Notes: generated from the sequence alone by a model not told the origin. A DNA stretch of 63,062 bases, filler included, from Octopus bimaculoides (GCF_001194135.2; 6 parts of 6 records of this genome joined end to end with filler, not necessarily neighbours in it); one strand, 5' to 3'. Positions 16,617 to 35,289 are shown, counted from the whole stretch's first letter. Numbers and translations are program-made.

Positions 16617-17072
16617 AACCAAGTTTCATGAACTCATCGATGAAAATCCACTATCACATATAGAAAAATTAATAATTAAAAGCACAATAAATGAGTATAA
16701 TATAATACAAAGTAAATATCATAAGATAAAGATAATAAAATGACTACACGTGTTTCATAACTAATTTTCAAATACAAAGGAAATTTAAATCGATTAGAAT
16801 CAATTAAAATTATCGAAAATAAATTCTATTCAAAAATACAGTTAATCGTCAGGTCTTAAATAGAACTGAAGTACGGAAAAATATGGATAAGTTCTATTTT
16901 TACTTTGCTAAATGATTTTCTACTATTTGAAAATAATATGTATTCTTGTTTTTTTATATTATTCATTTGGTTTTTTTTGAAACCAAGTTTCATGAACTCA
17001 TCGATGAAAATCCACTATCACATATAGAAAAATTAATAATTAAAAGCACAATAAATGAGTATAATATAATAC
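16617..17072 (+). repeat. Two identical 92-bp direct repeats (16617-16708, 16981-17072), end of a dispersed repeat family
   Basis: Exact duplication read by eye. A diverged inverted homologue lies at about 30885-30950, also next to (TA)n. Confidence 0.8.
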
Positions 17073-17074
17073 TT

Positions 17075-17107
<33 letters not shown>

Positions 17108-17217
17108 CTCAAACACACGCACACACATACATACACACACATACATACACACACACGTACACTTGTATCACACATTCGTACGTGCATATATGTATGTGTA
17201 TATGAAATATAATTGGT

Positions 17218-17286
<69 letters not shown>

Positions 17287-17317
17287 TGTGTGTGCGTACG
17301 CGTGCGAGCGCGACTGC

Positions 17318-17389
17318 GATCCGGAATACAATGGCTGTAAACAAATCACCTCATTGCTCAAAGAACTGAAGTTTGAACCGAGGAACTAA
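17318..17389 (+). pseudogene. Caspase C-terminal remnant (DPEYNGCKQITSLLKELKFEPRN*)
   Basis: Homologous to the last codons of the neighbouring caspases, with a 12-nt deletion. Truncated 5' by a (TG)n tract. Confidence 0.85.
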
Positions 17390-17483
17390 GATATTTAAGG
17401 TGCGGCATTCCTTAAATGAATATGGATCTTCTTACGGTTAGAATTTCTGATGCATGTGCATATTTTGAGTTGGAAGCCAGGAT

Positions 17484-17505
17484 TTGGATTTCGTTAACGC
17501 ATGCG
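17484..17505 (+). promoter_or_regulatory. Invariant 22-bp element upstream of caspase paralogue 1 (TTGGATTTCGTTAACGCATGCG)
   Basis: Identical at 20763-20784 and 23732-23753, about 90-100 bp before each ATG. It overlaps an NRF1-like CGCATGCG motif. The regulatory role is inferred. Confidence 0.5.
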
Positions 17506-17592
17506 TATTGATTGATAGCAATTTGAGAGGACAGAAATAATATATAATACACGGAACTACATTCAGCTCATCACATTATTACATTGACTACT

Positions 17593-18336
17593 ATGGCCGC
17601 TGGAAGTGCAAACGTTGGGACAGGCGTTCAGTCATCAACTGGCGATGATCTCAATAAATATTTCGCTGAATATGATATGAAAGATAAAACACGTGTTGCT
17701 TATATAGTCGACTCTGAGTGTTTATCAAACGATGCAATAGATTTTGGAAGGGCATTAAAACGTATTGGATTTAAATATGTCACTATTTCTAACATTTATG
17801 AAATGATGTGCAAAGATTGGAAAAAGTTTAACGAAGATAAACGTTATGGTAATATTGGTTGCTTTGTTTTTGTAATTATAAACTATGATCTTAAAAACGA
17901 TGGATTTGACGAAGTTGCACTAATTTCTAATCTGACAGCCGATAAGGGTCCATCTTTAGCAGGAGTACCTAAATTAATTTTTATTGAACCAAGTCGTGTA
18001 GATAGAGGACGCCACAAAACTGATGGACCTGAACCCGAACCTACGCAACGTAAAATCCCAATTACGGCAGATCTGTTGGTTTTTCGTTCGTGGTGGAATG
18101 AATTTCTGCCAATCAGCGGCGGACATGGAGATTCGCCGTTTATGAAAACATTAAGCAACGTTTTCATTAAGTATGGCACTGAATATGAAATCATGAAACT
18201 ATTAACAGCTGTCTCAAACTATATTGCCTCTTGTAAATTCCAAAGTTCGGATAATTCGGAAAACAATGGTTGTAAACAAATAACTCGGATCATGTCGACA
18301 TTGCTCAAAAAACTAAAGTTTGAACCGAGGAACTGA
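17593..18336 (+). CDS. Intronless caspase-3/7-like pseudo-protease (catalytically dead), 247 aa
   Basis: Caspase p20/p10 motifs (GVPKLIFI, KIPITADLLVF, IMSTLLKKLKF). QACRG is EPSRV, SHG is NYD, and both S1 arginines are absent. The frame is open and all indels versus the active paralogue are in-frame. Confidence 0.85.
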   Translation: MAAGSANVGTGVQSSTGDDLNKYFAEYDMKDKTRVAYIVDSECLSNDAIDFGRALKRIGFKYVTISNIYEMMCKDWKKFNEDKRYGNIGCFVFVIINYDLKNDGFDEVALISNLTADKGPSLAGVPKLIFIEPSRVDRGRHKTDGPEPEPTQRKIPITADLLVFRSWWNEFLPISGGHGDSPFMKTLSNVFIKYGTEYEIMKLLTAVSNYIASCKFQSSDNSENNGCKQITRIMSTLLKKLKFEPRN

Positions 18337-20469
18337 AATATTTCAAATGTGGATCCTTAAATAGAAATGCAGCTTCTTACGGTGAGAATTTCTGATGCAT
18401 CTACATATTATATGAAAAGAATATATTTTAGATATTCATACATCTAAAAATTCAAAGGGTGTATATTTTAAGAACTCATACATCTACAAATAAATACACT
18501 ATTTCACGTGTAATACCTACAACAGAAATTGATAAATAAATAAATGTAATATTTTTAACTAAATAATTACTAATACGATTGCAAACTTGATTTTAGTTTA
18601 ATTAATATCCTCTTACATTTTAAGATGCTTAACTAAAACTATTTCCTAAGAACGCCAGCGCTTTATTGGTACATTCTAAATTACAAACTAATTCTTCCCT
18701 CAGAAAATTGAACTAACATTCTTTTATATACAACTAAATATGAACAATATTAATATGTAGGCTATTTTATCCATGTGCTTTCATATATCGCTTGATTTGT
18801 AAAAGTTTATCTGCGAAAGAGAAATTATTTTTCTTGCTTTTCTTATTGCATTATACTATCTCAGCACCATTGCGTAATGTTTTTTTTTTCCAATGATTCT
18901 GCTATTTTTTTTACTCTGGTGGTTAATCTCACAATAAAATTTGTCTTTTATTAACATATAGTCTCTGAATTACCAACAACATAATAAAGTCTATCAGTTT
19001 TTACGTTGTTTCTTAATTTATTAAAATATATAAAGTGTGAATGAATGCTTAATTTATAAATGAATAAAGTTCTTTTCAAAAATTTCTTAAGTATTCCGAT
19101 GTTTTCATTATTGAAGTTTACGATTTTGCANNNNNNNNNNNNNNNNNNNNNNNNNNNNNNNNNNNNNNNNNNNNNNNNNNNNNNNNNNNNNNNNNNNNNN
19201 NNNNNNNNNNNNNNNNNNNNNNNNNNNNNNNNNNNNNNNNNNNNNNNNNNNNNNNNNNNNNNNNNNNNNNNNNNNNNNNNNNNNNNNNNNNNNNNNNNNN
19301 NNNNNNNNNNNNNNNNNNNNNNNNNNNNNNNNNNNNNNNNNNNNNNNNNNNNNNNNNNNNNNNNNNNNNNNNNNNNNNNNNNNNNNNNNNNNNNNNNNNN
19401 NNNNNNNNNNNNNNNNNNNNNNNNNNNNNNNNNNNNNNNNNNNNNNNNNNNNNNNNNNNNNNNNNNNNNNNNNNNNNNNNNNNNNNNNNNNNNNNNNNNN
19501 NNNNNNNNNNNNNNNNNNNNNNNNNNNNNNNNNNNNNNNNNNNNNNNNNNNNNNNNNNNNNNNNNNNNNNNNNNNNNNNNNNNNNNNNNNNNNNNNNNNN
19601 NNNNNNNNNNNNNNNNCATGGCTTGTGTGTGTGTAAGTGTGTGTGTGTTTGCGCGTCAAGTGCTTTACCATTAAGCTAAACTGCCCAGTAACGAATTCAT
19701 CTGTAATTTTAGAACTTATAAATTTAGTTTCATAAAGTTCGAGTCTCATGGCTGGCCGGTAGCGTATTTTTCTGCAATGTATGGATATTTTATCCTTCTC
19801 ACGCTATTTATTAGCATTATATTTTTTCAATTTTAAACTTTGAGAAGAAAACGCCCAATGTCACTCCTCAGACAATTTCCTGATTTCCAAAACTACAAAA
19901 CTCCGTATATTGTACGTATTGGGTGTGATCCTTTCAGCTAGCACAGATTTCCCCAGAAAAGTAGAAGGAAAAGATCAACCCCCTCACCAGAAAACTGGAT
20001 ATGCTAGAAATAAAAACTGAATGGGAAAATATTATTTCCTCGGCTTAACTACATCTTGTTTTTCGATTAACTCCAGCAAAGTACTCCAAGTTTAGTCTCT
20101 GGCCATATCCATCCCAGCACCATTCCACTGAAGAAAACTACACACACACGTACGCACACACAGATACACACACATTCGCACACACGCATACACACGCACA
20201 TTTTGGAAAAAGAAATTGTTTTGCGATAGAAACTGGAAGTGACATCAGAGACATCCTGTAATTCCATCTGAACTACATGTGATGTCATCGTCCCCGTAGT
20301 CATTATCATCGACGTGGTCGAAGAAAATATCGAGTTTGCAGTGTTATGTAGTGTTATCCGGGATGTTGATAGATACGACAACATTGAGAAGAGAGGATAC
20401 CTGCAAAATGTTCCGCACAGAAAAGCAGAGACAAATGAGGCATCCATAATGCAAAGTGTGGAAGTACAC

Positions 20470-20683
20470 GGAGGATTTATCTCTTGGCAGGGCAGTGACT
20501 TTTATGCAACGTTTAAGGAAATTTTTTAAGGAAATATGGCACTGAATATGATATCATGAAATTTTGAACCGCCGTCTCTATGTTGCCTCACTTGAATTCC
20601 GAAGTTCAGATAATCCGGAAAACAATGGCTGTAAACAAATAACCTCATTGCACAAAGAACTAAAGTTTCAACCGAGGAACTAA
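20470..20683 (+). pseudogene. Frameshifted caspase small-subunit remnant
   Basis: FMQRL..KYGTEYDIMKF..VASLEFRSSDNPENNGCKQITSLHKELKFQPRN* across frameshifts; carries the same 12-nt deletion as 17318-17389. Confidence 0.85.
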
Positions 20684-20762
20684 AATATTTCAGATGTAGC
20701 AACCTCAAATGAATATGGATCTTCTTACGGTGAGAATTTCTGACGCATGTGCATATTTTGAG

Positions 20763-20784
20763 TTGGATTTCGTTAACGCATGCG
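20763..20784 (+). promoter_or_regulatory. Invariant 22-bp upstream element, paralogue 2
   Basis: Identical to 17484-17505 and 23732-23753. Confidence 0.5.
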
Positions 20785-20947
20785 CATCAGTAGCAAACTT
20801 ACGTTAGTCAGATGGGAGGGCAGAAATAATATATCATACACGTAACTACATTCAGCTCATCACATTGTTATATTGATTACTATGGCCGCTGGAAGAGCAA
20901 ACGTTGAGACAAGCGATCAGTAGTATTCACCAATTGACGAAGCTCTC

Positions 20948-21646
20948 ATGGAATATTCCGTTGAATATGATATGAAGAATAAAACACATGTAGCTTATAA
21001 AGTCGACTCTGGGTGTTCATCATACGATGCAATAGATTTTGGAAGGGCATTAAAACGTATTGGATTTCATTATGTCCTTATTTATGACGATTTTAAAATA
21101 ATGTGCAAAGGTTTGGAAATTTTTAACGAAGATTGTAATATTGGTTGCTTTGTTTGTGCAATTACGAACCATAATCTTAAAAACGATGGATTTGACGAAG
21201 TTGCACTAATTTCTAATCTGACAGCCGATAAGTGTCGATTTTTAAAAGGAGTACCTAAATTAATTTTTATTGGACCAAGTCGTGTAGATAGAGGACACCA
21301 CGTAACTGATGGACCTGAACCCGAACCTACGCAACGTAAAATCCCAATTACGGCAGATCGGTTGGTTTTTCGTTCGTGGTGGAATGAATTTCTGCCAATC
21401 AGCGGCGGACATGGAGATTCGCCGTTTATGAAAACATTAAGCAACGTTTTCACTAAGTATGGCACTGAATATGAAATCATGAAACTATTAACAGCTGTCT
21501 CAAACTATATTGCCTCTTGTAAATTCCAAAGTTCGGATAATTCGGAAAACAATGGCTGTAAACAAATAACTCGGATCATGTCGACATTGCTCAAAAAACT
21601 GAAGTTTGTTCCGAGGAGGCAAAATATTTTAAATGTAGATCCTTAA
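20948..21646 (+). CDS. Second intronless caspase-like pseudo-protease, 232 aa (ancestral ATG at 20882 is cut off by an in-frame TAG at 20921-20923)
   Basis: Paralogue of 17593-18336. QACRG is GPSRV; His is retained (NHN) but Cys is Ser. It may be a young pseudogene or may initiate at 20948. Confidence 0.75.
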   Translation: MEYSVEYDMKNKTHVAYKVDSGCSSYDAIDFGRALKRIGFHYVLIYDDFKIMCKGLEIFNEDCNIGCFVCAITNHNLKNDGFDEVALISNLTADKCRFLKGVPKLIFIGPSRVDRGHHVTDGPEPEPTQRKIPITADRLVFRSWWNEFLPISGGHGDSPFMKTLSNVFTKYGTEYEIMKLLTAVSNYIASCKFQSSDNSENNGCKQITRIMSTLLKKLKFVPRRQNILNVDP

Positions 21647-23080
21647 ATAGAAATTAACATATAGTCTCTGAATTACCAACAACATAATAAAGTCTATCAG
21701 TTTTTACGTTGTTTCTTAATTTATTAAAATATATAAAGTGTGAATGAATGCTTAATTTATAAATGAATAAAGTGTGAATGAAGGCTTCATCTATGAATGA
21801 ATAAAGTGTTATTAAATGCTTCATCTATAATTTTGTTTGCCTGAAACGCAATATTTGGATGATGTTTACAATCCTATCATTTTCTTGTCATTTTCTTGCA
21901 GCTAATTGTTCGGCAATTTCCGTAAATAATTTCTTAATAATTTACCATCATTTCATATCCTGTTGAAGTCGATATTTGCTTTGAAGTCGTTGAGGTGGGC
22001 AAAATGAGACACTGAAGCTAGGAGCGAGTACACAAAAAGGCACCCGCATACTCACACGCACGCCTAGAATACAAATTTGCAANNNNNNNNNNNNNNNNNN
22101 NNNNNNNNNNNNNNNNNNNNNNNNNNNNNNNNNNNNNNNNNNNNNNNNNNNNNNNNNNNNNNNNNNNNNNNNNNNNNNNNNNTTTTTAGTTTTCAACATG
22201 AAACAAAACTAACATAAAGATGGAAAATAATGTTTATTTTTGTATATTTACATTAGAAAAGTTTTCTCCAATGTTTTTTGAATACAAAGTCCCAGAACAG
22301 ATCCTCACTATGGCACCGTGAATACTTTGAAATTATATTTCCGATTTCAAATAAACTACTTTGAATGTTATTGTAGCAAGGTTAAAGTGATTTCTTTTGT
22401 GATGTAAACCATTTACCATTTCTGCGGTGCCCCTACTTCCCTTGATACTCTAATCCTTATTTTGCTTAACGGTTAATCTAGCGCTGCCGATAATTTACAC
22501 TACAATCAGGAATTTACACTAGATTTAGGAATCTAATTATTTTATAATCAAATTTTTCTGCTAATAACAAAACTACATAAGAATCTTTCGTTCACACTTG
22601 AAATATTTTCATAGATTAAGACCTAACGTAAAAGCTAATATATTTTATTATTTCGTTGTCATTTCAGAGACTTTATGTTGTATATAAAACAATGTTAGTT
22701 CAATTTTCAGAGTGAAGAATTATTTTGAAATTTACAATATTCCTAGAAGGCACTGGTGTTCTAAGTAAAATTCATGGTAGGAAATAGTTTTAGTTAAACA
22801 TTAAAATGTTAGAGGTTATTTATTTAAGCAAATCAAGTTTGTAGTCACATGAAGAATTTTTTAGGTGCAGACATATTTATTTATCAATTTATGTTGTGGG
22901 TATTACATGTGAAAATATTTTATTTATTTGTAGGTGTATGAATTCCTAAAATATATACCTTTGCATTTGTGAATGTATGCGTGTCTAAAATATTTTTTTT
23001 TCGTATAATATACACATGCATCAGAAATTCTCACCGTAAAAATCTCCGTTTCTCTTTAAGGATCCCACACCGGAAATATT

Positions 23081-23351
23081 TTAGTTCTTTGGTTCAAACT
23101 TTAATCTTTTGAGCAATGTTGACATAATCTGAGGCATTTGTTTACAGCCACTGCATTCCGGATTATCCGGATTTTTGAATTCAAAAGAGGCAACACGTTT
23201 ACAGACAGCAGTTAACAATTTCATGATTTCATAGTCAGTGCCATATTTCACCAAAATTTTACTTAAAGTCTGCATAAAACACGAACCGTTACGTTTATGC
23301 ATGATTGACGGATGTTTATTATACGACGAATGGAAAACCAACATATCTGCC
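23081..23351 (-). CDS. 3' part of an inverted caspase-3/7-like paralogue (5' part presumably in the gap at 23352-23451)
   Basis: Open frame ADMLVFHSSYNKHPSIMHKRNGSCF...IMSTLLKRLKFEPKN*, running into Ns. Its 3' flank mirrors the 3' flank of the 23851 gene. Confidence 0.8.
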
Positions 23352-23540
23352 NNNNNNNNNNNNNNNNNNNNNNNNNNNNNNNNNNNNNNNNNNNNNNNNN
23401 NNNNNNNNNNNNNNNNNNNNNNNNNNNNNNNNNNNNNNNNNNNNNNNNNNNAGATTCTTATGTAGTTCTGCTATAAGCAGAAAATTTTGTTTGTAAAATA
23501 ATTAAATTCCTAAATCTAGTGTAATTTATCAGTTGCACTG

Positions 23541-23731: not shown

Positions 23732-23753
23732 TTGGATTTCGTTAACGCATGCG
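23732..23753 (+). promoter_or_regulatory. Invariant 22-bp upstream element, active caspase
   Basis: Identical to the copies upstream of paralogues 1 and 2. Confidence 0.5.
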
Positions 23754-23850: not shown

Positions 23851-24620
23851 ATGGACGCTGTAAGTGTAAATGGTAGTACAGGCGCTCAGTTCCATTTACC
23901 AACTGAGGAAGATTTAATGAAATGTTTCGAAAAATATGACATGACACATGAAAAGCGAGGTGTTGCCTACATCTTCAACATGAAAAATTTCAGTGACCCA
24001 AAACTTCAAACTCGTCACGGCTCATCGAAAGACACAAAACATTTAAAAAGGGCTTTAGAAAATCTTGGTTTTCATGAAGATGATATCAACATATGTAAAG
24101 ATTTTACAGCCAAAGAAATGCTCGGGGCTTTGGAAGAATTTGACCTAAACAATCCTAAAATTAATATTGATTGCTTTGTTTGTGCAATTCTGAGTCATGG
24201 TGGTAAAAACGATATCATATGTGGATACGAAGGTAAAGTTGAGCTAGACGAATTGCTTTCTTGCCTGAGACCCGATCGCTGTCCATCTCTAACAGGAGTA
24301 CCTAAATTAATCTTTATTCAAGCATGTCGTGGAAGTAAGATTGATGTTGGAGTCGAAAAAAACGATGCTGCGGAAACAGAATCTGAAAGAAAGTCACCCA
24401 AAATTCCAATTATGGCAGATATGTTGGTTTTCCATTCGTCGTATAATAAACATCCGTCAATCAGGAATGAAGACAAAGGTTCGTGGTTTATGCAGACTTT
24501 AAGTACAGTGTTGATGGAACATGGCACTGACTATGAAATCATGAAATTGTTAACTGCTGTCTGTAAACGTGTTGCCTCTTTTGAATTCAAAAATCCGGAT
24601 AATCCGGAATGCAGTGGCTG
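23851..24620 (+). CDS. Intronless effector caspase (caspase-3/7-like) with an intact active site; the last ~21 codons fall in the gap
   Basis: RHG (S1 Arg, 24013), SHG (His, 24196), QACRG (Cys, 24325) and SIRNEDKGSWF (second S1 Arg, 24463) are all present. Short prodomain; Asp in the inter-subunit linker (EKND/A). Confidence 0.95.
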
Positions 24621-25182
24621 NNNNNNNNNNNNNNNNNNNNNNNNNNNNNNNNNNNNNNNNNNNNNNNNNNNNNNNNNNNNNNNNNNNNNNNNNNNNNNNN
24701 NNNNNNNNNNNNNNNNNNNNNNNNNNNNNNNNNNNNNNNNNNNNNNNNNNNNNNNNNNNNNNNNNNNNNNNNNNNNNNNNNNNNNNNNNNNNNNNNNNNN
24801 NNNNNNNNNNNNNNNNNNNNNNNNNNNNNNNNNNNNNNNNNNNNNNNNNNNNNNNNNNNNNNNNNNNNNNNNNNNNNNNNNNNNNNNNNNNNNNNNNNNN
24901 NNNNNNNNNNNNNNNNNNNNNNNNNNNNNNNNNNNNNNNNNNNNNNNNNNNNNNNNNNNNNNNNNNNNNNNNNNNNNNNNNNNNNNNNNNNNNNNNNNNN
25001 NNNNNNNNNNNNNNNNNNNNNNNNNNNNNNNNNNNNNNNNNNNNNNNNNNNNNNNNNNNNNNNNNNNNNNNNNNNNNNNNNNNNNNNNNNNNNNNNNNNN
25101 NNNNNNNNNNNNNNNNNNNNNNNNNNNNNNNNNNNNNNNNNNNNNNNNNNNNNNNNNNNNNNNNNNNNNNNNNNNNNNNNNN

Positions 25183-26443: not shown

Positions 26444-27985
26444 GCAGCAGTCTACATCACTGCGATCACCACCACCACCACCACCACCACCACCACAACC
26501 ACCACCACCACCACAACGTGGCTATGTGTCGCAGCAAAAGTTACTTACACCACCAGCTTGGCATCATTAGGAGGGTGACTGCTGTTACTATTAATATAAC
26601 GCCGTCACATCATCCAGCAGCAACAGTTGTAAGTTTGTTTACATCAACGCTTAGACAGTCGGCAACATTTACTGAGTCACTGTCGCTGGTAACATAAAAT
26701 TGAGGAATGGTTTAACGGAACCTGTATTAACTAGACATTTCCGAGACTACTTTGCTTCTGAGGATTTGCCTTTCCGCCTGAAGTATACAGGTTTTGTGAA
26801 ACTTGCCGCCATTGTCAGAAGCTTTCCTGGTGGATTAAATGTGTGTGTGTGTGGATATACATAGATAGATACATAACGTTGACCACAGCACATTGAATGT
26901 CCGCGTTAGTGGTCAACGTTATATATAAAAATATACTTTAATCCCTTGAGATTGCAGATATTATTTCTGAATCTCTTTGATTCTTTAAATGTGCTAGCTT
27001 CCTGGTAATTAATCGATATTAATTAATATATGATTTTTTACCCTATGTTTTAATAGATAGATAGATAGATAGATAGATACATANNNNNNNNNNNNNNNNN
27101 NNNNNNNNNNNNNNNNNNNNNNNNNNNNNNNNNNNNNNNNNNNNNNNNNNNNNNNNNNNNNNNNNNNNNNNNNNNNNNNNNNNNNNNNNNNNNNNNNNNN
27201 NNNNNNNNNNNNNNNNNNNNNNNNNNNNNNNNNNNNNNNNNNNGGGGCCGAGCGAATGAGGAAGAAATTAATGTAGGTTATGTACTTCGAATATTTTCTA
27301 CTTAAATCAGTCAGGCTAAATAAAGGGGTTTTTTTTTTTTCCATCTATTGTCTGCTTTGAGCTTTTGGTAACCGAAATTGGTTAGTTAAAGAATATGGGA
27401 GTCGACTCTCATATAGGAACTCGTACCGAAAGATCGCCGAAAAATCTATATCACCCCACTCCCGGAGCCTCGGGAAGCTTTAGGTGTTTTTGCTCAATAA
27501 ACACTCACCACTGGCCCATTGTGTCTCCACCATGGACAACCGTATGCTGTCAACAACAAAACTAACACGGTCGGGAGTAGCAGTGGTGCCGACGATGACA
27601 ATAACGACAACAACTACCACAATGGCAACACCGGGAACGAACACACAGCAGCAGCATCAAGGGCTGAGGGGTTGGGGCTGAGGAGAAAGAGACACGGCTG
27701 CTAAAAATTATGATACACACACACACACACACACACACAGCACACATACACTCACACATACACACACACACACTCAAGGGCACAAACGCATGCGCACATA
27801 AAGATACACATCTTAGAAGAACAGAATGGAGTGGAGCAAGAACACACACGGAAACGTAAAGTGTCGCTGAAGAGGTCACAGATGTGTGACGAAAGATTTC
27901 CGGACAATGGACAAGCGTCAAAATAATAAAAATAACAGTAATAAACGAGTGAAGAAAACTATATAGTGCGTGTGCTTATTTGGCA

Positions 27986-28076
<91 letters not shown>

Positions 28077-29479
28077 GAAATGGCCGTCCCGAAGTACAAG
28101 AATATTTTAAGATTTTTGAAATATATCGCTTACCTCTCTTTATTATTTACATACCACACTCTGATCGGTTCTCTCCCCTTAACGGGGAACATTACTCTCC
28201 CTTCTATTTCTTAGTAAATTCTCTTTCTTTCCCTTTCTTACAACGAAAGCAACAGTAGGTGGCAGCACCACCAGCCTCTTGTCAAATTTTCCACGAAAAA
28301 TGCCATATCTATACAAAGTATCGCTAAAACATTTACCAGCTTCTTCTTGGCCATAGAATACTTCATCCTTGATCAACCACAAATATTCTACAAAGCCCAC
28401 ATTCCAGTCGTGTTCCCTGCAGTGTAAACCGCAGTGAAATAGCCGTCACAAGTAGCAAAAGCTGAAGGACTACTGCAATAAGTGTATGACTCTGAGAGGG
28501 GAATTTGTTGAATAAAATCATAATTAATTGATCTTTCTGCATTTCCTTTTGCTCAAAGCCAGGAACTTTTCACCACCCCTCGTATGTATTCATGCATGAA
28601 TGCATGCATGTATGTATGTATGTATGTATGCATGCAAAACAAAAGATGAGTTGCCCCACCTTGGGGCCAATAAGACATAAGAAAGGCAAAGTAATTTATT
28701 CTTTCACTTGTTTCAGTCATTTGACTGCGGCCATGCTGACATTTTGTTTAAATTTTTTGTTGAATAAAATCTATTGAAAAAAAGCCACAATAATTTTGCA
28801 CAAACCTTATATATATATTTTCCAGCTTCTTAACCTCCGTATTTTTCCACATGTATTAAAAAAATCAAATTGAGTATGATTATTTTTTAGTATTTGAACT
28901 ATTTCTGTTATTTTCGCAATTTATCCAGTACAATGCTTAAATAAGTAAATAGTATTTTCCTAAACAATAGATCCACCTATTTCGGTTAGTGACACATTCA
29001 CGAATATACCAACACTAGCGCCACTGAGGGTCATATTCTCTGTGAATGCACAAAAGCTATTTTCAGAGTTATTTACTTTGAATTGTTATTATCTCATATC
29101 TGATTAGCCTGTTATTACGTAACATGCTTCACAATTTTAGTATACATACTTTATTAGTATTTCCCCCTATGTTCTATATACTGTGGGAATGTATTAAACC
29201 CCTTTTCGGGGCTACTTTATTTGAATTCTTACTATCAGGTAATTAATTTCATGTTATTACATAACTGACTTCACAATTTGGGTATTCATAACTTACTGGG
29301 AATTCCTAAAAACAAGATCCTGTGTAAGACAGTTCGGTATTCTCAATAAATGCACAAAAGCCGTTTTAAGGGCTACATACTTTGTATTGTTACTGATTAG
29401 TGAAACAATTATGAGAACAGAACCGCTTTCCCAGGATTACCAGGTACGTCAACTAGTATATATGTATATATATATATAT

Positions 29480-29890
29480 ATACACAAAAAGACCCATCAA
29501 GCCAAGTGAAAACGTAGTCATGAGTAATGACGGTGTCATGTAACTGGCACGCAAAAAGCACCTTTCAAGCGCTGGGCCTAACAGAGGTGATGATATATGA
29601 CAAAGATCTTTGTCAATATGCCATGCTTGAGTGGAAGACCCATCAAGCCAAGTCAGAATTGTAATGATGGCAGATAATGGTGTCATGAAACTGGCACCCA
29701 TGCTGGTGGCACAGAATTGCACCCATTACACTCTCAGAGTGTTTGGTGTTAGGAAGGGCATCCAGCCTTAGAAACAATGCCAAATCAAACTGGAGTCTAG
29801 TGCAACCCGTCAGCTTACCAGCCCTGGTCAAATTGGCCAACCCATGCCAGCATGGACAACAGATGCTAAATGATGATAATGATGGTGATA
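29480..29890 (+). mobile_element. Dispersed repeat, family D (SINE-like, GAT-repeat tail)
   Basis: cccattacactctcagagtgtttggtgttaggaagggcatccagc...catgccagcatggacaacagatgctaaatgatgat; related copies at 34165, 35290 and 62925. Confidence 0.75.
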
Positions 29891-30001
29891 CACACATACA
29901 CACACAGAGTAAATTTCAAAAATAAATAGAGTCAATCATTTTTTTGAAGGATTTATTTTGAGAAAGAAAATAATGCTATCTGATGCATTTAAATAATTCA
30001 T

Positions 30002-30460
30002 TTAGGATTTAGTTGACGTTTCTTCTGAAGGTCTTAATGTTTTAACCCATTTGGCTCTCTCTACCACCTTATTTGTCCTATCCTTTGGATATCTGTGGGT
30101 CAAAGAGGGTTTCCTTCTTGCTACTTTACCGTAGTAGCCAAGTTGATGAAGATACCTCACAGAAGTTCTCCGACTCTTTTGGAGTTGCTCTGCAACATCA
30201 GCTGCCTTACAATGGGGATTGTTTTCAACAATCTGTTCAACAGTCTGAAGACATTTATCAGAGGGCCCAGGTCGACCTGAGCGGGAGGCAGTTGATTCCT
30301 TTCCTTCGCTGGTGAACTGTACAATCACTCTGTTCACTGTGGCAAGAGGAATTCCAAGGCTTTGTGCAATCTTACGCTGGCTACGTCCACTATCAGACTG
30401 ACCCACGATACGTCCTCTTTGAAAATCTGACAATTCTTTCGCGTCTGGTGTTCGTGGCAT
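30002..30460 (-). CDS. Truncated Tc1-like transposase (DNA-binding domain only), copy 1, 152 aa
   Basis: [36 protein letters not shown] are Tc1 N-terminal motifs; no DDE domain. Confidence 0.8.
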
Positions 30461-30774
30461 GACCAGTTGCTATAAACAATTAATATACTGTAATCTGAAA
30501 TGAAAAATAATAGTACTTTTAAGAAGTGGGGGCGAGGCAATGTATTCATTTTTAAGAAGTCTGTTTATATATGAGGATGTGCTAAAGAGACAATACTGGA
30601 AGATCAGTTAATAATGATTTCATTCAACATATTCTCCTCTCAGATTCACACACACTCTGCAGTGGTCCTTCAGTTTTTCTAAGCACTGTAAAGGAACTTG
30701 GAAAATTAGGGCTCCAACCAGGCCTTTCACAATATCTTTAAAGCCAGGAACTTTTCAGTATCCCCTCCTATGTG

Positions 30775-34460: not shown

Positions 34461-34659
34461 GCTTTACACCACCAGAAGGATCAGTCTTAACATGTCTACT
34501 GTGTGGTACGTGTCTTCTTGATGATAACGTATGATAATGATGATGGTGATACACACATACACATACACAGTAAATTTCAAAACCAGAGTCAATCATTTTT
34601 TTGAAGGATTTAATTTCAAGAACGAAAATAATGTTATATGATGCGTTTAAATAATTCAT

Positions 34660-35118
34660 TTAGGATGTAGTTGAGATTTCTTCTGTAGGTTTTAATGTTT
34701 TAACCCATTTGGCTCTCTCTACCACCTTATTTGTCCAATCCTTTGGATATCTGTGGGTCAAAGAGGGTTTCCTTCTTGCTACTTTACCGTAGTAGCCAAG
34801 TTGATGAAGATACCTCACAGAAGTACTCCGACTCTTTTGGAGTTGCTCTGCAACATCAGCTGCCTTACAATGTGGATTATTTTCAACAATCTGTTCAACA
34901 GTCTGAAGACATTTATCAGAGGGCCCAGGTCGACCTGAGCGGGAGGCAGTTGATTCCTTTCCTTCGCTGGTGAACTGTACAATCACTCTGTTCACCGTGG
35001 CAAGAGGAATTCCAAGGCTTTGTGCAATCTTACGCTGGCTACGTCCACTATCAGACTGACCCACGATACGTCCTCTTTGAAAATCTGACAATTCTTTCGC
35101 GTCTGGAGTTCGTGGCAT
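34660..35118 (-). CDS. Truncated Tc1-like transposase (DNA-binding domain only), copy 2, 152 aa
   Basis: 11 nt differences from copy 1 over 459 nt (manual count); same truncation. Confidence 0.8.
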
Positions 35119-35289
35119 GACCAGTTGCTATAAACAATTAATATACTGTAATCTGAAATGAAAAATAATAGTACTTTAAGAAGTTTAAAGGACCAGATAA
35201 TGACTGCACATTAATGATGCAAAGCAGTATGGGAAGGTGGGGGCCGGCTATTCAATTTTGAGTAATTTATTTGTTTATATATATATATA

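What the first reader, a model, noticed from the sequence alone, without database searches (positions are those of the whole stretch)
17593..18336. Active site dismantled at every position while the dimer interface is kept
Seen versus the 23851 gene (caspase-3 numbering): the loop carrying R64 is removed by an 11-codon in-frame deletion, H121 is Y, Q161 is E, C163 is S (TGT>AGT), R207 is lost (FLPISGGHGDSPF), and there is a further 7-codon in-frame deletion. Yet KYGTEYEIMKLLTAV and CKQ..IMSTLLKKLKFEP are almost unchanged. Known: that last strand (beta6) forms the caspase dimer interface. Inference: selected for dimerisation or scaffolding, not catalysis; all indels preserving frame argues against simple decay.
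Basis: partly seen in the sequence, partly recalled or inferred. Interest (0 to 1): 0.75.

Follow-up and report, generated by a model that had tools for sequence, protein, structure and literature searches.

The report
Octopus dead caspase copy, fast-evolving
An octopus gene copied from a cell-death protease has lost all its catalytic parts, yet two octopus species still keep it as an intact gene whose protein changes faster than neutral DNA. It therefore looks like a working non-enzyme relative (a "pseudo-caspase"), although nothing shows that its dimer-forming strand is the part being preserved.

Summary
Window 17593-18336 (Octopus bimaculoides chromosome CM046628.1) is an intact 247-codon, single-exon caspase-3/7-like ORF. 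It lacks the R64 loop, H121, Q161, C163, G165 and R207, and differs from the neighbouring Cys-bearing copy by seven deletions, all in frame.

It is not a simple decaying pseudogene:
- O. sinensis has an intact orthologue (XP_029653346.2) with the same inactivating deletions.
- Chance survival of both ORFs under neutrality is about 1%.
- Indels in the CDS are fewer than in the flanks and mostly in frame.
- The family's 20-bp upstream motif, TATA-like box and start context are kept.
- dN/dS in the dead lineage is 2.3 (p=0.0007 against 1). The excess lies in the N-terminus and p20. Neutral simulations never reach the pairwise value of 2.1.

In the p10 region omega cannot be told apart from 1. The O. 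sinensis orthologue has altered beta6 and helix 5. Non-coding flanks are as similar between paralogues as p10 is, and the beta6 motif is conserved across the whole family.

A second tandem dead copy (20882-21646) carries a premature stop.

Best reading: a rapidly evolving pseudo-caspase that acts by binding, or as a decoy substrate (the linker Asp is kept). It is a new member of a known kind. Expression is untested.

The parts
17593..18336 (+). dead1: a 247-codon, single-exon caspase-3/7-like ORF without the catalytic or S1 residues. Key codons: Y98 (position of H121) 17884-17886; E132 (Q161) 17986-17988; S134 (C163) 17992-17994; S175 (R207) 18115-18117; R64-loop deletion junction 17718/17719; retained linker Asp144 18022-18024; beta5 KIPITADLLVFRSW 18052-18093; helix-5 motif 18169-18213; beta6 motif 18271-18327.
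17486..17505 (+). 20-bp motif GGATTTCGTTAACGCATGCG, 88 bp upstream of the dead1 ATG. It is identical upstream of dead2, of the Cys-bearing copy, of the O. sinensis dead orthologue and of other cluster genes in O. sinensis and O. vulgaris. It is a probable promoter element.
   Evidence: 0 matches expected by chance in the window
17541..17547 (+). TATA-like box TATATAA, 46 bp upstream of the ATG, inside a block conserved between the dead and Cys-bearing copies. The start context ACTACTATGG is also conserved.
17319..17464 (+). Remnant of the 3' end of a p10 region plus its 3' flank, from an older tandem copy, lying just upstream of dead1. The same arrangement occurs upstream of dead2 and of the O. 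sinensis orthologue.
20882..21646 (+). dead2: a tandem twin of dead1, 92% nt identity in the CDS, with the same inactivating deletions. It has His at position 121 and Ser at position 163. It carries an in-frame TAG at codon 14 (20921-20923), and a 232-codon ORF restarts at the ATG at 20948. It has also lost the original stop codon and about 580 bp of 3' flank.
20765..20784 (+). The same 20-bp promoter motif, upstream of dead2.
20500..20757 (+). p10-tail remnant upstream of dead2.
23851..24620 (+). Cys-bearing caspase-3/7-like copy, with TRHGSS (R64), SHG, QACRG and SIRN (R207) all present. It is cut by an assembly gap at 24621.
23734..23753 (+). The same 20-bp promoter motif, upstream of the Cys-bearing copy.
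23084..23351 (-). Inverted p10-only fragment of another Cys-type copy, cut by the gap at 23352. It is the only place in the window where the family's beta6 strand of a non-dead copy can be read. It is closest to the p10 of O. sinensis P0006.

Best explanation
dead1 is a pseudo-caspase: a non-catalytic, effector-type (short-prodomain) paralogue. It sits in a lineage-specific, fast-evolving tandem cluster of single-exon caspase-3/7-like genes in Octopus.

Shown:
- Catalysis was abolished by deletions shared with O. sinensis (the R64 loop, the hairpin after the His, and G165). These deletions therefore predate the split of the two species.
- The remaining catalytic residues were then lost independently. 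His became Y in dead1 and Q in O. sinensis, and is still H in dead2. Cys became S in O. bimaculoides and V in O. sinensis.
- Since the split, the ORF, the start context and the family's upstream motif have been kept.
- The protein has changed about twice as fast as synonymous and flanking sites, mostly in the N-terminus and p20.

Inferred:
- It is expressed from the family promoter and works by binding rather than cutting.
- The most likely roles are a regulator or decoy for the cluster's active caspases or their regulators. It could be a decoy substrate, because the intersubunit Asp (KTD|G) is retained, or a partner in mixed dimers.
- The diversifying selection would then reflect co-evolution with fast-changing partners or with pathogen factors.
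- dead2 is probably a dying duplicate.
For: - Fold and family. Pfam C14 at 5e-14. Best PDB sequence matches are caspase-7 and caspase-3. The best fold match of a weak model is procaspase-7.
- Catalytic and S1 residues are absent.
- O. sinensis has an intact orthologue with the same deletions, in a syntenic locus.
- ORF survival under neutrality has P=0.012.
- The CDS has 4 indels, of which three (6, 3 and 15 bp) are in frame. The flanks have 15 indels, of which 2 are in frame.
- Pairwise omega is 2.1 between dead1 and the O. sinensis orthologue (p=0.006-0.007) and 3.6 between dead1 and dead2 (p=0.004).
- In the branch model, the dead lineage since the species split (crown) has omega 2.31 (p=0.0007). 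The branch leading to it has 0.67 and the Cys-bearing paralogues have 0.69.
- Differences are skewed away from codon position 3.
- CDS divergence (0.23) exceeds flank divergence (0.13-0.18).
- None of 150 neutral AT-biased simulations reached omega 2.1, either without or with 5-fold CpG hypermutability.
- The 20-bp upstream motif is exactly conserved in all dead and active copies.
- The linker Asp codon is kept in all three dead genes.
Against: - There is no expression or protein evidence of any kind.
- Only three dead-lineage sequences, from two species, were available, so the omega tests rest on few synonymous changes.
- dead2 has a premature stop, and the O. sinensis copy has a C-terminal frameshift and a deletion in helix 5. 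Parts of the lineage may therefore be decaying.
- The structure model is of low confidence (pLDDT 55).
- Omega is about 0.7-1.4 across the whole cluster, so constraint is weak everywhere.
- The binding partner and the mode of action are pure inference.
Confidence: 0.55

Rival explanations
1. Reader's version. The gene is kept specifically for its p10/beta6 dimer interface, so that it can pair with active caspases as a scaffold or dominant-negative subunit, as cFLIP(L) does with caspase-8.
For: - The beta6 motif and the helix-5 motif are retained in dead1.
- Between dead1 and dead2, the p10 region is 99% identical, with omega 0.35 against 6.0 for the rest.
- Most p10 changes that can be polarised (by eye, from the alignment) fall on the O. 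sinensis branch.
Against: - p10 omega in the dead lineage is 1.46. On the O. bimaculoides branches it is 0.91. Neither differs significantly from 1.
- The O. sinensis orthologue changed the central beta6 residue (M to A) and KQ to ER, deleted AVSNY in helix 5 and lost the tail.
- The non-coding 3' flank (84%) and the upstream region (77%) are as similar between paralogues as p10 is (74-76%).
- The beta6 motif is conserved across the whole family and is a core strand of the fold.
- The near-identical dead1/dead2 stretch could be a gene-conversion tract.
Confidence: 0.2
2. An unprocessed pseudogene (or a pair of them) in slow neutral decay, whose reading frame is open by chance and because it is young.
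For: - dead2 has a stop at codon 14, has lost its own stop codon and has a deleted 3' flank.
- The O. sinensis copy has a 1-bp indel near its end and a 5-codon deletion.
- No purifying selection is detectable.
- There are no expression data.
- Conserved positions cluster only weakly along the protein.
Against: - Both ORFs staying open has P=0.012.
- There is a deficit of indels in the CDS, and those present are mostly in frame.
- Omega is significantly above 1, not equal to 1, and neutral simulations give a median of 0.7-0.8 with a maximum of 1.7.
- The promoter motif is unchanged, where roughly 6 substitutions would be expected under neutrality (my estimate from the divergences; motif conservation).
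Confidence: 0.15
3. The dead1/dead2 pair is an assembly artefact: two divergent haplotypes or a collapsed repeat placed in tandem. Under this reading there is one dead gene per haploid genome.
For: - The region is full of N gaps.
- A 121-bp stretch that is 100% identical (18950-19070 = 21653-21773) lies next to a gap, although the copies otherwise differ by 8-14%.
- O. sinensis shows a single copy within +/-10 kb.
Against: - A divergence of 8% in the CDS and 12-14% in the flanks, with several indels, is far above ordinary allelic variation.
- Each copy has its own upstream p10 remnant and promoter.
- In any case this would not affect the reality of dead1, which O. sinensis confirms.
Confidence: 0.1

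Closest known systems
cFLIP(L) / CFLAR, the vertebrate pseudo-caspase (PMC7586951)
   Same: - It is a paralogue sitting next to its active relatives (CASP8 and CASP10).
- It keeps a caspase-like fold but has replaced the His and Cys.
- It keeps an Asp in the intersubunit linker, at which it is cleaved.
- It regulates the protease it evolved from.
   Different: - cFLIP is initiator-type with two DEDs and acts at the DISC through heterodimers (PDB 3H13). The octopus protein is effector-type with a short prodomain.
- The octopus protein has additionally deleted the R64 loop, the post-His hairpin and G165.
- The octopus protein evolves with omega above 1.
- Heterodimerisation of the octopus protein is untested.
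Aedes aegypti CASPS18, a 'decoy caspase' paired with CASPS19 (as described in PMC4840389; the primary paper was not read here)
   Same: - It is a lineage-specific duplicate of a short-prodomain effector caspase that lacks catalytic capacity.
- It is co-expressed with its active paralogue and is proposed to modulate it.
   Different: - It belongs to the insect Decay-like lineage.
- It is reported to enhance its partner.
- Nothing is known of a partner, a direction of effect or expression for the octopus gene.
C. elegans CSP-3 and CSP-2 (PMC3591282 and references 22 and 23 cited in it)
   Same: [quoted passage not shown] They were reported to restrain the active caspase CED-3.
   Different: - According to PMC3591282, CSP-3 lacks an active site, whereas CSP-2 has a variant pentapeptide (VCCRG). 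From memory, CSP-3 corresponds mainly to the small subunit.
- The csp-3 phenotype was not reproduced in PMC3591282.
- The octopus gene keeps both subunits.
Other octopus cluster paralogues with QASRG or EASRG (P0005, P0007, P0008) and the protein P0012 from a Logan assembly
   Same: - They belong to the same single-exon family.
- Cys163 is replaced by Ser.
- ORFs are intact in both species, and omega is about 1.3.
   Different: - They keep His121.
- P0007 and P0008 also keep R64 and R207.
- dead1 has lost every one of these, and has deletions as well.

Membership tests
Caspase fold / Peptidase C14A (homology) | Significant match to the caspase domain profile across both p20 and p10 | tested here: met
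   Pfam PF00656 at 5.2e-14, covering residues 45-241. phmmer against caspase-7 structures gives 7e-13.
Caspase fold / Peptidase C14A (homology) | Predicted three-dimensional fold matches solved caspases | tested here: inconclusive
   The AF2 model has mean pLDDT 54.7 and a poorly modelled p10. Its best Foldseek hits are all caspases (procaspase-7 1gqf, TM 0.57, E 2e-8).
Active caspase (enzyme) | His121-Cys163 catalytic dyad within SHG and QACxG | tested here: not met
   dead1 has NYD and EPSR (TAT and AGT codons), with G165 deleted. O. sinensis has NQD and EAVE.
Active caspase (enzyme) | Asp-binding S1 pocket formed by R64, Q161 and R207 | tested here: not met
   The R64 loop is deleted (11 codons), Q161 is E and R207 is S.
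Pseudo-caspase (pseudoenzyme kept by selection) | Reading frame maintained across species beyond the neutral expectation | tested here: met
   Intact O. sinensis orthologue. P=0.012 for stop-free survival. Deficit of indels in the CDS, mostly in frame. Only two species were available.
Pseudo-caspase (pseudoenzyme kept by selection) | Non-neutral pattern of protein evolution | tested here: met
   Omega in the dead lineage since the species split is 2.31, p=0.0007. 0 of 150 neutral simulations reached the observed pairwise omega. The signal is positive selection, not purifying selection.
Pseudo-caspase (pseudoenzyme kept by selection) | Transcribed and translated | not testable with these tools
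   Indirect evidence only: the family promoter motif, TATA-like box and start context are conserved.
Pseudo-caspase (pseudoenzyme kept by selection) | Binds or regulates an active caspase (for example through a beta6-mediated heterodimer) | not testable with these tools
   No multimer prediction or binding assay was available. Sequence evidence for selection on the interface is negative or inconclusive.
Unprocessed pseudogene | Disabling stop or frameshift, and omega about 1 | tested here: not met
   dead1 has no disablement and omega is significantly above 1. For the twin dead2 the first criterion is met: TAG at codon 14.

The most novel reading that the evidence does not exclude
Octopus may carry a graded series of effector-type pseudo-caspases. 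One lineage (EASRG/QASRG) keeps an intact S1 pocket. The other is the fully gutted dead lineage described here. The gutted one may be engaged in an arms race, as a rapidly diversifying decoy. After cleavage at the retained linker Asp it could soak up either pathogen-encoded factors that target caspases or members of the expanded molluscan IAP family. If so, it would be an immune-type 'bait' built on a caspase fold rather than a cFLIP-like dimer partner.
Probability: 0.2. Interest if true: 0.7.

Novelty: new member of a known kind. Interest (0 to 1): 0.5.

Why it matters
Pseudo-caspases are few. The FLIP(L) review read here (PMC7586951) calls FLIP(L) the only human one, and the others I came across are CASPS18 in a mosquito and CSP-3 in a nematode. 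Each has taught something about how protease activation is tuned.

This would be a cephalopod example of the effector type, arising inside a fast-evolving tandem cluster and showing dN/dS above 1. It would give a natural system for asking what a caspase fold is used for once catalysis is gone. It would also show how lineage-specific expansions of the cell-death machinery in molluscs diversify.

It is also a methodological caution. The apparent conservation of the 'interface' comes from comparing it with an unusually fast-diverging p20 region.

Tried and rejected
- Transcript evidence from Logan assemblies. The 90% clusters of dead1 and of the O. sinensis orthologue each have a single member from a genome assembly. 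None of the named octopus caspases lists Logan among its sources either, so this absence says nothing.
- The O. vulgaris orthologue. By synteny it lies about 490 bp beyond the edge of the farthest locus I could fetch (L005). The neighbouring annotated gene is a spliced, repeat-derived model that I could not reconstruct for a look-up.
- The library of 1.84 billion representatives gave no further dead-lineage member beyond the cluster represented by P0003.
- The structure model from an 11-sequence alignment was weak (pLDDT 55). I ran no further search on a deeper alignment, because a better monomer model would not test dimerisation.
- An overlapping antisense ORF (17883-18194, minus strand) as the cause of the low synonymous rate: rejected. 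It does not cover most of the N-terminal/p20 stretch (17593-17882) that carries most of the excess non-synonymous change.
- Compositional non-equilibrium as the cause of omega above 1: rejected by simulation and by base composition per codon position.
- Gene conversion from the neighbouring Cys-bearing copy as the source of p10 similarity: rejected. The dead-lineage p10 is closer to other paralogues (the FQSSDNSE.NG motif), and the NJ tree places the dead lineage next to the P0004/P0009 group.
- Literature searches found no description of octopus pseudo-caspases.

Full report
**Where this is.** The piece comes from Octopus bimaculoides assembly GCA_001194135.2, chromosome CM046628.1. It holds part of a tandem cluster of caspase-3/7-like genes, each with a single coding exon. 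The assembly here is broken by several N gaps. The caspase-like pieces are:
- dead1, 17593-18336 (+);
- dead2, 20882-21646 (+);
- an inverted p10-only fragment, 23084-23351 (-), cut by a gap;
- a Cys-bearing copy, 23851-24620 (+), also cut by a gap;
- two short remnants of p10 tails, 17319-17464 and 20500-20757, lying just upstream of the dead copies.

**The observation.** dead1 is an open 247-codon frame that matches Pfam Peptidase_C14 (5e-14) and solved caspase-7 and caspase-3 structures.
- An 11-codon deletion removes the loop that carries R64.
- H121 is Y (TAT).
- Q161 is E.
- C163 is S (TGT>AGT).
- R207 is S.
- A 7-codon deletion follows the His.

There are five more in-frame deletions, including G165 of the pentapeptide. 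In all, seven deletions remove 30 codons. One correction is needed. The 23851 gene ends in an assembly gap, so its beta6 strand is not in the window. That motif can only be compared with the inverted fragment. Across the whole p10 region, amino-acid identity to the Cys-type copies is 52-57%, against 40% for the rest. The difference is real but modest.

**Relatives.** The large protein search found only octopus proteins. One of them, O. sinensis XP_029653346.2 (P0003, annotated 'caspase-7-like'), is the orthologue. Its full ORF is L001 9911-10630 (239 codons). It shares the R64-loop deletion, the post-His deletion and the G165 deletion, and it lacks Cys (V), His (Q) and R207 (H).

The locus is syntenic in the two species. 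Both have a decayed minus-strand caspase fragment 7-8.5 kb upstream and a p10-tail remnant just before the gene. The inactivating deletions therefore predate the species split.

The leftover catalytic residues were lost independently afterwards. dead2 still has His, dead1 has Tyr and O. sinensis has Gln.

O. sinensis shows one dead copy within 10 kb. The dead1/dead2 pair (synonymous divergence dS 0.03) therefore looks like a duplication specific to O. bimaculoides, although an assembly artefact is not excluded.

**Decay or maintenance.** Between dead1 and the O. sinensis orthologue there are 142 substitutions and no stop codon in either. Neutral simulation leaves both frames open in 1.2% of runs.

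The flanks carry 15 indels in about 1.05 kb, of which 2 are multiples of three. The CDS carries 4 indels: 6, 3 and 15 bp, plus a 1-bp insertion six codons from the end that only trims the tail.

A 20-bp motif, GGATTTCGTTAACGCATGCG, lies about 90-115 bp upstream of the ATG. It is identical in dead1, dead2, the Cys-bearing copy, the O. sinensis dead gene and other cluster genes of O. sinensis and O. vulgaris. It is followed by a conserved TATA-like box and start context. Given the flank divergences, about six substitutions would be expected in that motif across the dead lineage if it were neutral (my estimate). These results argue that the gene is still selected as a transcribed coding unit.

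dead2, by contrast, has a TAG at codon 14 after the ancestral ATG, has lost its stop codon and has a deletion of about 580 bp in its 3' flank. It is probably on its way out.

**Mode of selection.** Pairwise codon likelihood gives:
- omega 2.1 for dead1 against the O. sinensis orthologue (p about 0.006 against omega=1);
- omega 3.6 for dead1 against dead2 (p=0.004).

I wrote a branch model on the tree ((dead1,dead2),Os_dead,(P0009,Os_2366)). It gives:
- omega 2.31 for the dead lineage since the species split (likelihood-ratio statistic 11.55, p=0.0007);
- 0.67 for the branch leading to that lineage;
- 0.69 for the Cys-bearing paralogues.

The excess lies in the N-terminus, p20 and linker (omega 2.87, p=0.001).

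Several checks agree with this. Differences are skewed towards codon positions 1 and 2 (57/53/32). dS (0.13) matches flank divergence (0.13-0.18), while the non-synonymous divergence dN (0.26-0.28) exceeds it. Neutral simulations with the AT-rich flank composition, without or with 5-fold CpG hypermutability, give a median omega of 0.7-0.8, and none of 150 reaches 2.1.

The family as a whole is weakly constrained. The 23851 gene against its O. sinensis orthologue gives omega 0.68, and the EASRG pair P0007/P0008 gives 1.32. The dead lineage is the extreme of a fast-evolving cluster.

**The dimer-interface idea.** The evidence that selection acts on it specifically is weak:
- p10 omega in the dead lineage is 1.46 and cannot be told apart from 1.
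- The O. sinensis orthologue has IAS for IMS at the strand centre and ER for KQ before it. It has also deleted five residues (AVSNY) of helix 5 and lost the four terminal residues.
- Between paralogues, the non-coding upstream region (77%) and 3' flank (84%) are as similar as p10 (74-76%). The outlier is p20, at 66%.
- The motif ..KQMPQIMSTLLK.LKFEP is shared by every family member.

In favour of the idea, p10 is 99% identical between dead1 and dead2, with omega 0.35. However, the changes are too few for significance, and a conversion tract would look the same. Conserved positions cluster only weakly along the protein. The longest identical run is the beta5 strand KIPITADLLVFRSW (p=0.046).

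**Mechanism.** Shown: a caspase-fold protein without catalytic or S1 residues, kept open and diversifying. Inferred: it acts by binding.

Two features suggest how. First, the intersubunit Asp is retained in all three dead genes (KTD|G in dead1, VTD|G in dead2, AVD|A in O. sinensis), so it may still be cut by caspases. That fits a decoy substrate, or a regulator activated by processing, as with the cleavage of FLIP(L) at Asp376 (PMC7586951). Second, the core strands are kept, so mixed dimers are possible.

Diversifying selection points to co-evolution with fast-changing partners, or to host-pathogen conflict. I could not test expression, folding with confidence (pLDDT 55; best fold hits are caspases) or any interaction.

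**Comparison and novelty.** The closest known cases are:
- FLIP(L) (PMC7586951);
- the mosquito 'decoy caspase' CASPS18 (as described in PMC4840389);
- C. elegans CSP-3 and CSP-2 (PMC3591282).

dead1 fits the pseudo-caspase kind on homology, loss of catalysis and maintenance of the frame. Expression and partner binding remain untested. I found no paper describing octopus pseudo-caspases. I rate it a new member of a known kind, of moderate interest.

Noticed in passing
window 20882-21646: A second dead caspase copy, 92% nt identical to dead1. It has a premature TAG at codon 14 (20921-20923), a lost stop codon and a deletion of about 580 bp in the 3' flank. It still has His at position 121, together with Ser at position 163.
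   Followed up: yes
window 17486-17505, 20765-20784, 23734-23753; L001 9808-9827; L003 2263-2282; L004 5778-5797 and 9898-9917: An exactly conserved 20-bp motif, GGATTTCGTTAACGCATGCG, lies about 90-115 bp upstream of the ATG of most cluster genes in three octopus species. From memory, its GCATGCGC core resembles an NRF1/Ewg-type site. It is absent upstream of the EASRG genes on another chromosome (L007, L008).
   Followed up: partly
P0005, P0007 (O. bimaculoides, CM046619.1; P0007 is encoded at L007 3001-3888), P0008 (O. sinensis, L008 3001-3849): A separate group of family members has QASRG or EASRG (Cys163 to Ser) with His121 intact. P0007 and P0008 also keep R64 and R207. ORFs are intact in both species, and omega for the P0007/P0008 pair is 1.32. 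This may be a second, older pseudo-caspase lineage with an intact substrate pocket.
   Followed up: partly
L006 148-903 (Logan run SRR11869385, species unknown): A 251-aa caspase-like ORF with EASRG, its own deletion of the R64 loop, H121 replaced and R207 replaced. It is another gutted family member in some cephalopod.
   Followed up: no
window 23084-23351 (-) with gaps at 22083-22182 and 23352-23451: An inverted p10 fragment, 93% identical to the end of the 23851 gene and closest to the p10 of O. sinensis P0006. The contig between the two gaps may be misoriented or misplaced in the scaffold. The order and orientation of the cluster also differ from O. sinensis.
   Followed up: partly
window 18950-19070 = 21653-21773; 16617-16708 = 16981-17072: Perfectly identical repeats of 121 bp and 92 bp. 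The first lies next to an N gap, inside copies that otherwise differ by 8-14%. These may be gap-filling or scaffolding artefacts.
   Followed up: no
window 30002-30460 (-) and 34660-35118 (-); repeat 29870-30527 = 34531-35184 (95.6%): Two copies of a 152-aa ORF with HTH domains of Tc1/mariner (Sleeping Beauty / Tc3) transposases. A 152-aa ORF with the same domains sits in the O. sinensis cluster (L003 19357-19815).
   Followed up: partly
window 17883-18194 (-), 21082-21480 (-); L001 10273-10530 (-): An antisense ORF of 85-132 aa is open over the linker/p10 part of all three dead genes. This is probably a by-product of codon composition.
   Followed up: partly
window 23851-24620 vs L003 14455-15285; L003 2366-3187 vs L005 14121-14939: Even the Cys-bearing cluster genes evolve with omega 0.7-1.4 between octopus species. 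Several have lost R64, Q161 or R207 while keeping Cys (for example TATCRG in P0160, and EACRG with R207 replaced by Ile in P0006).
   Followed up: partly
window 16946-17369 and 27562-28214: Long (CA)n/(TG)n and (ATT/ATA)n microsatellites give rise to spurious ORFs just upstream of dead1 and elsewhere in the piece.
   Followed up: no
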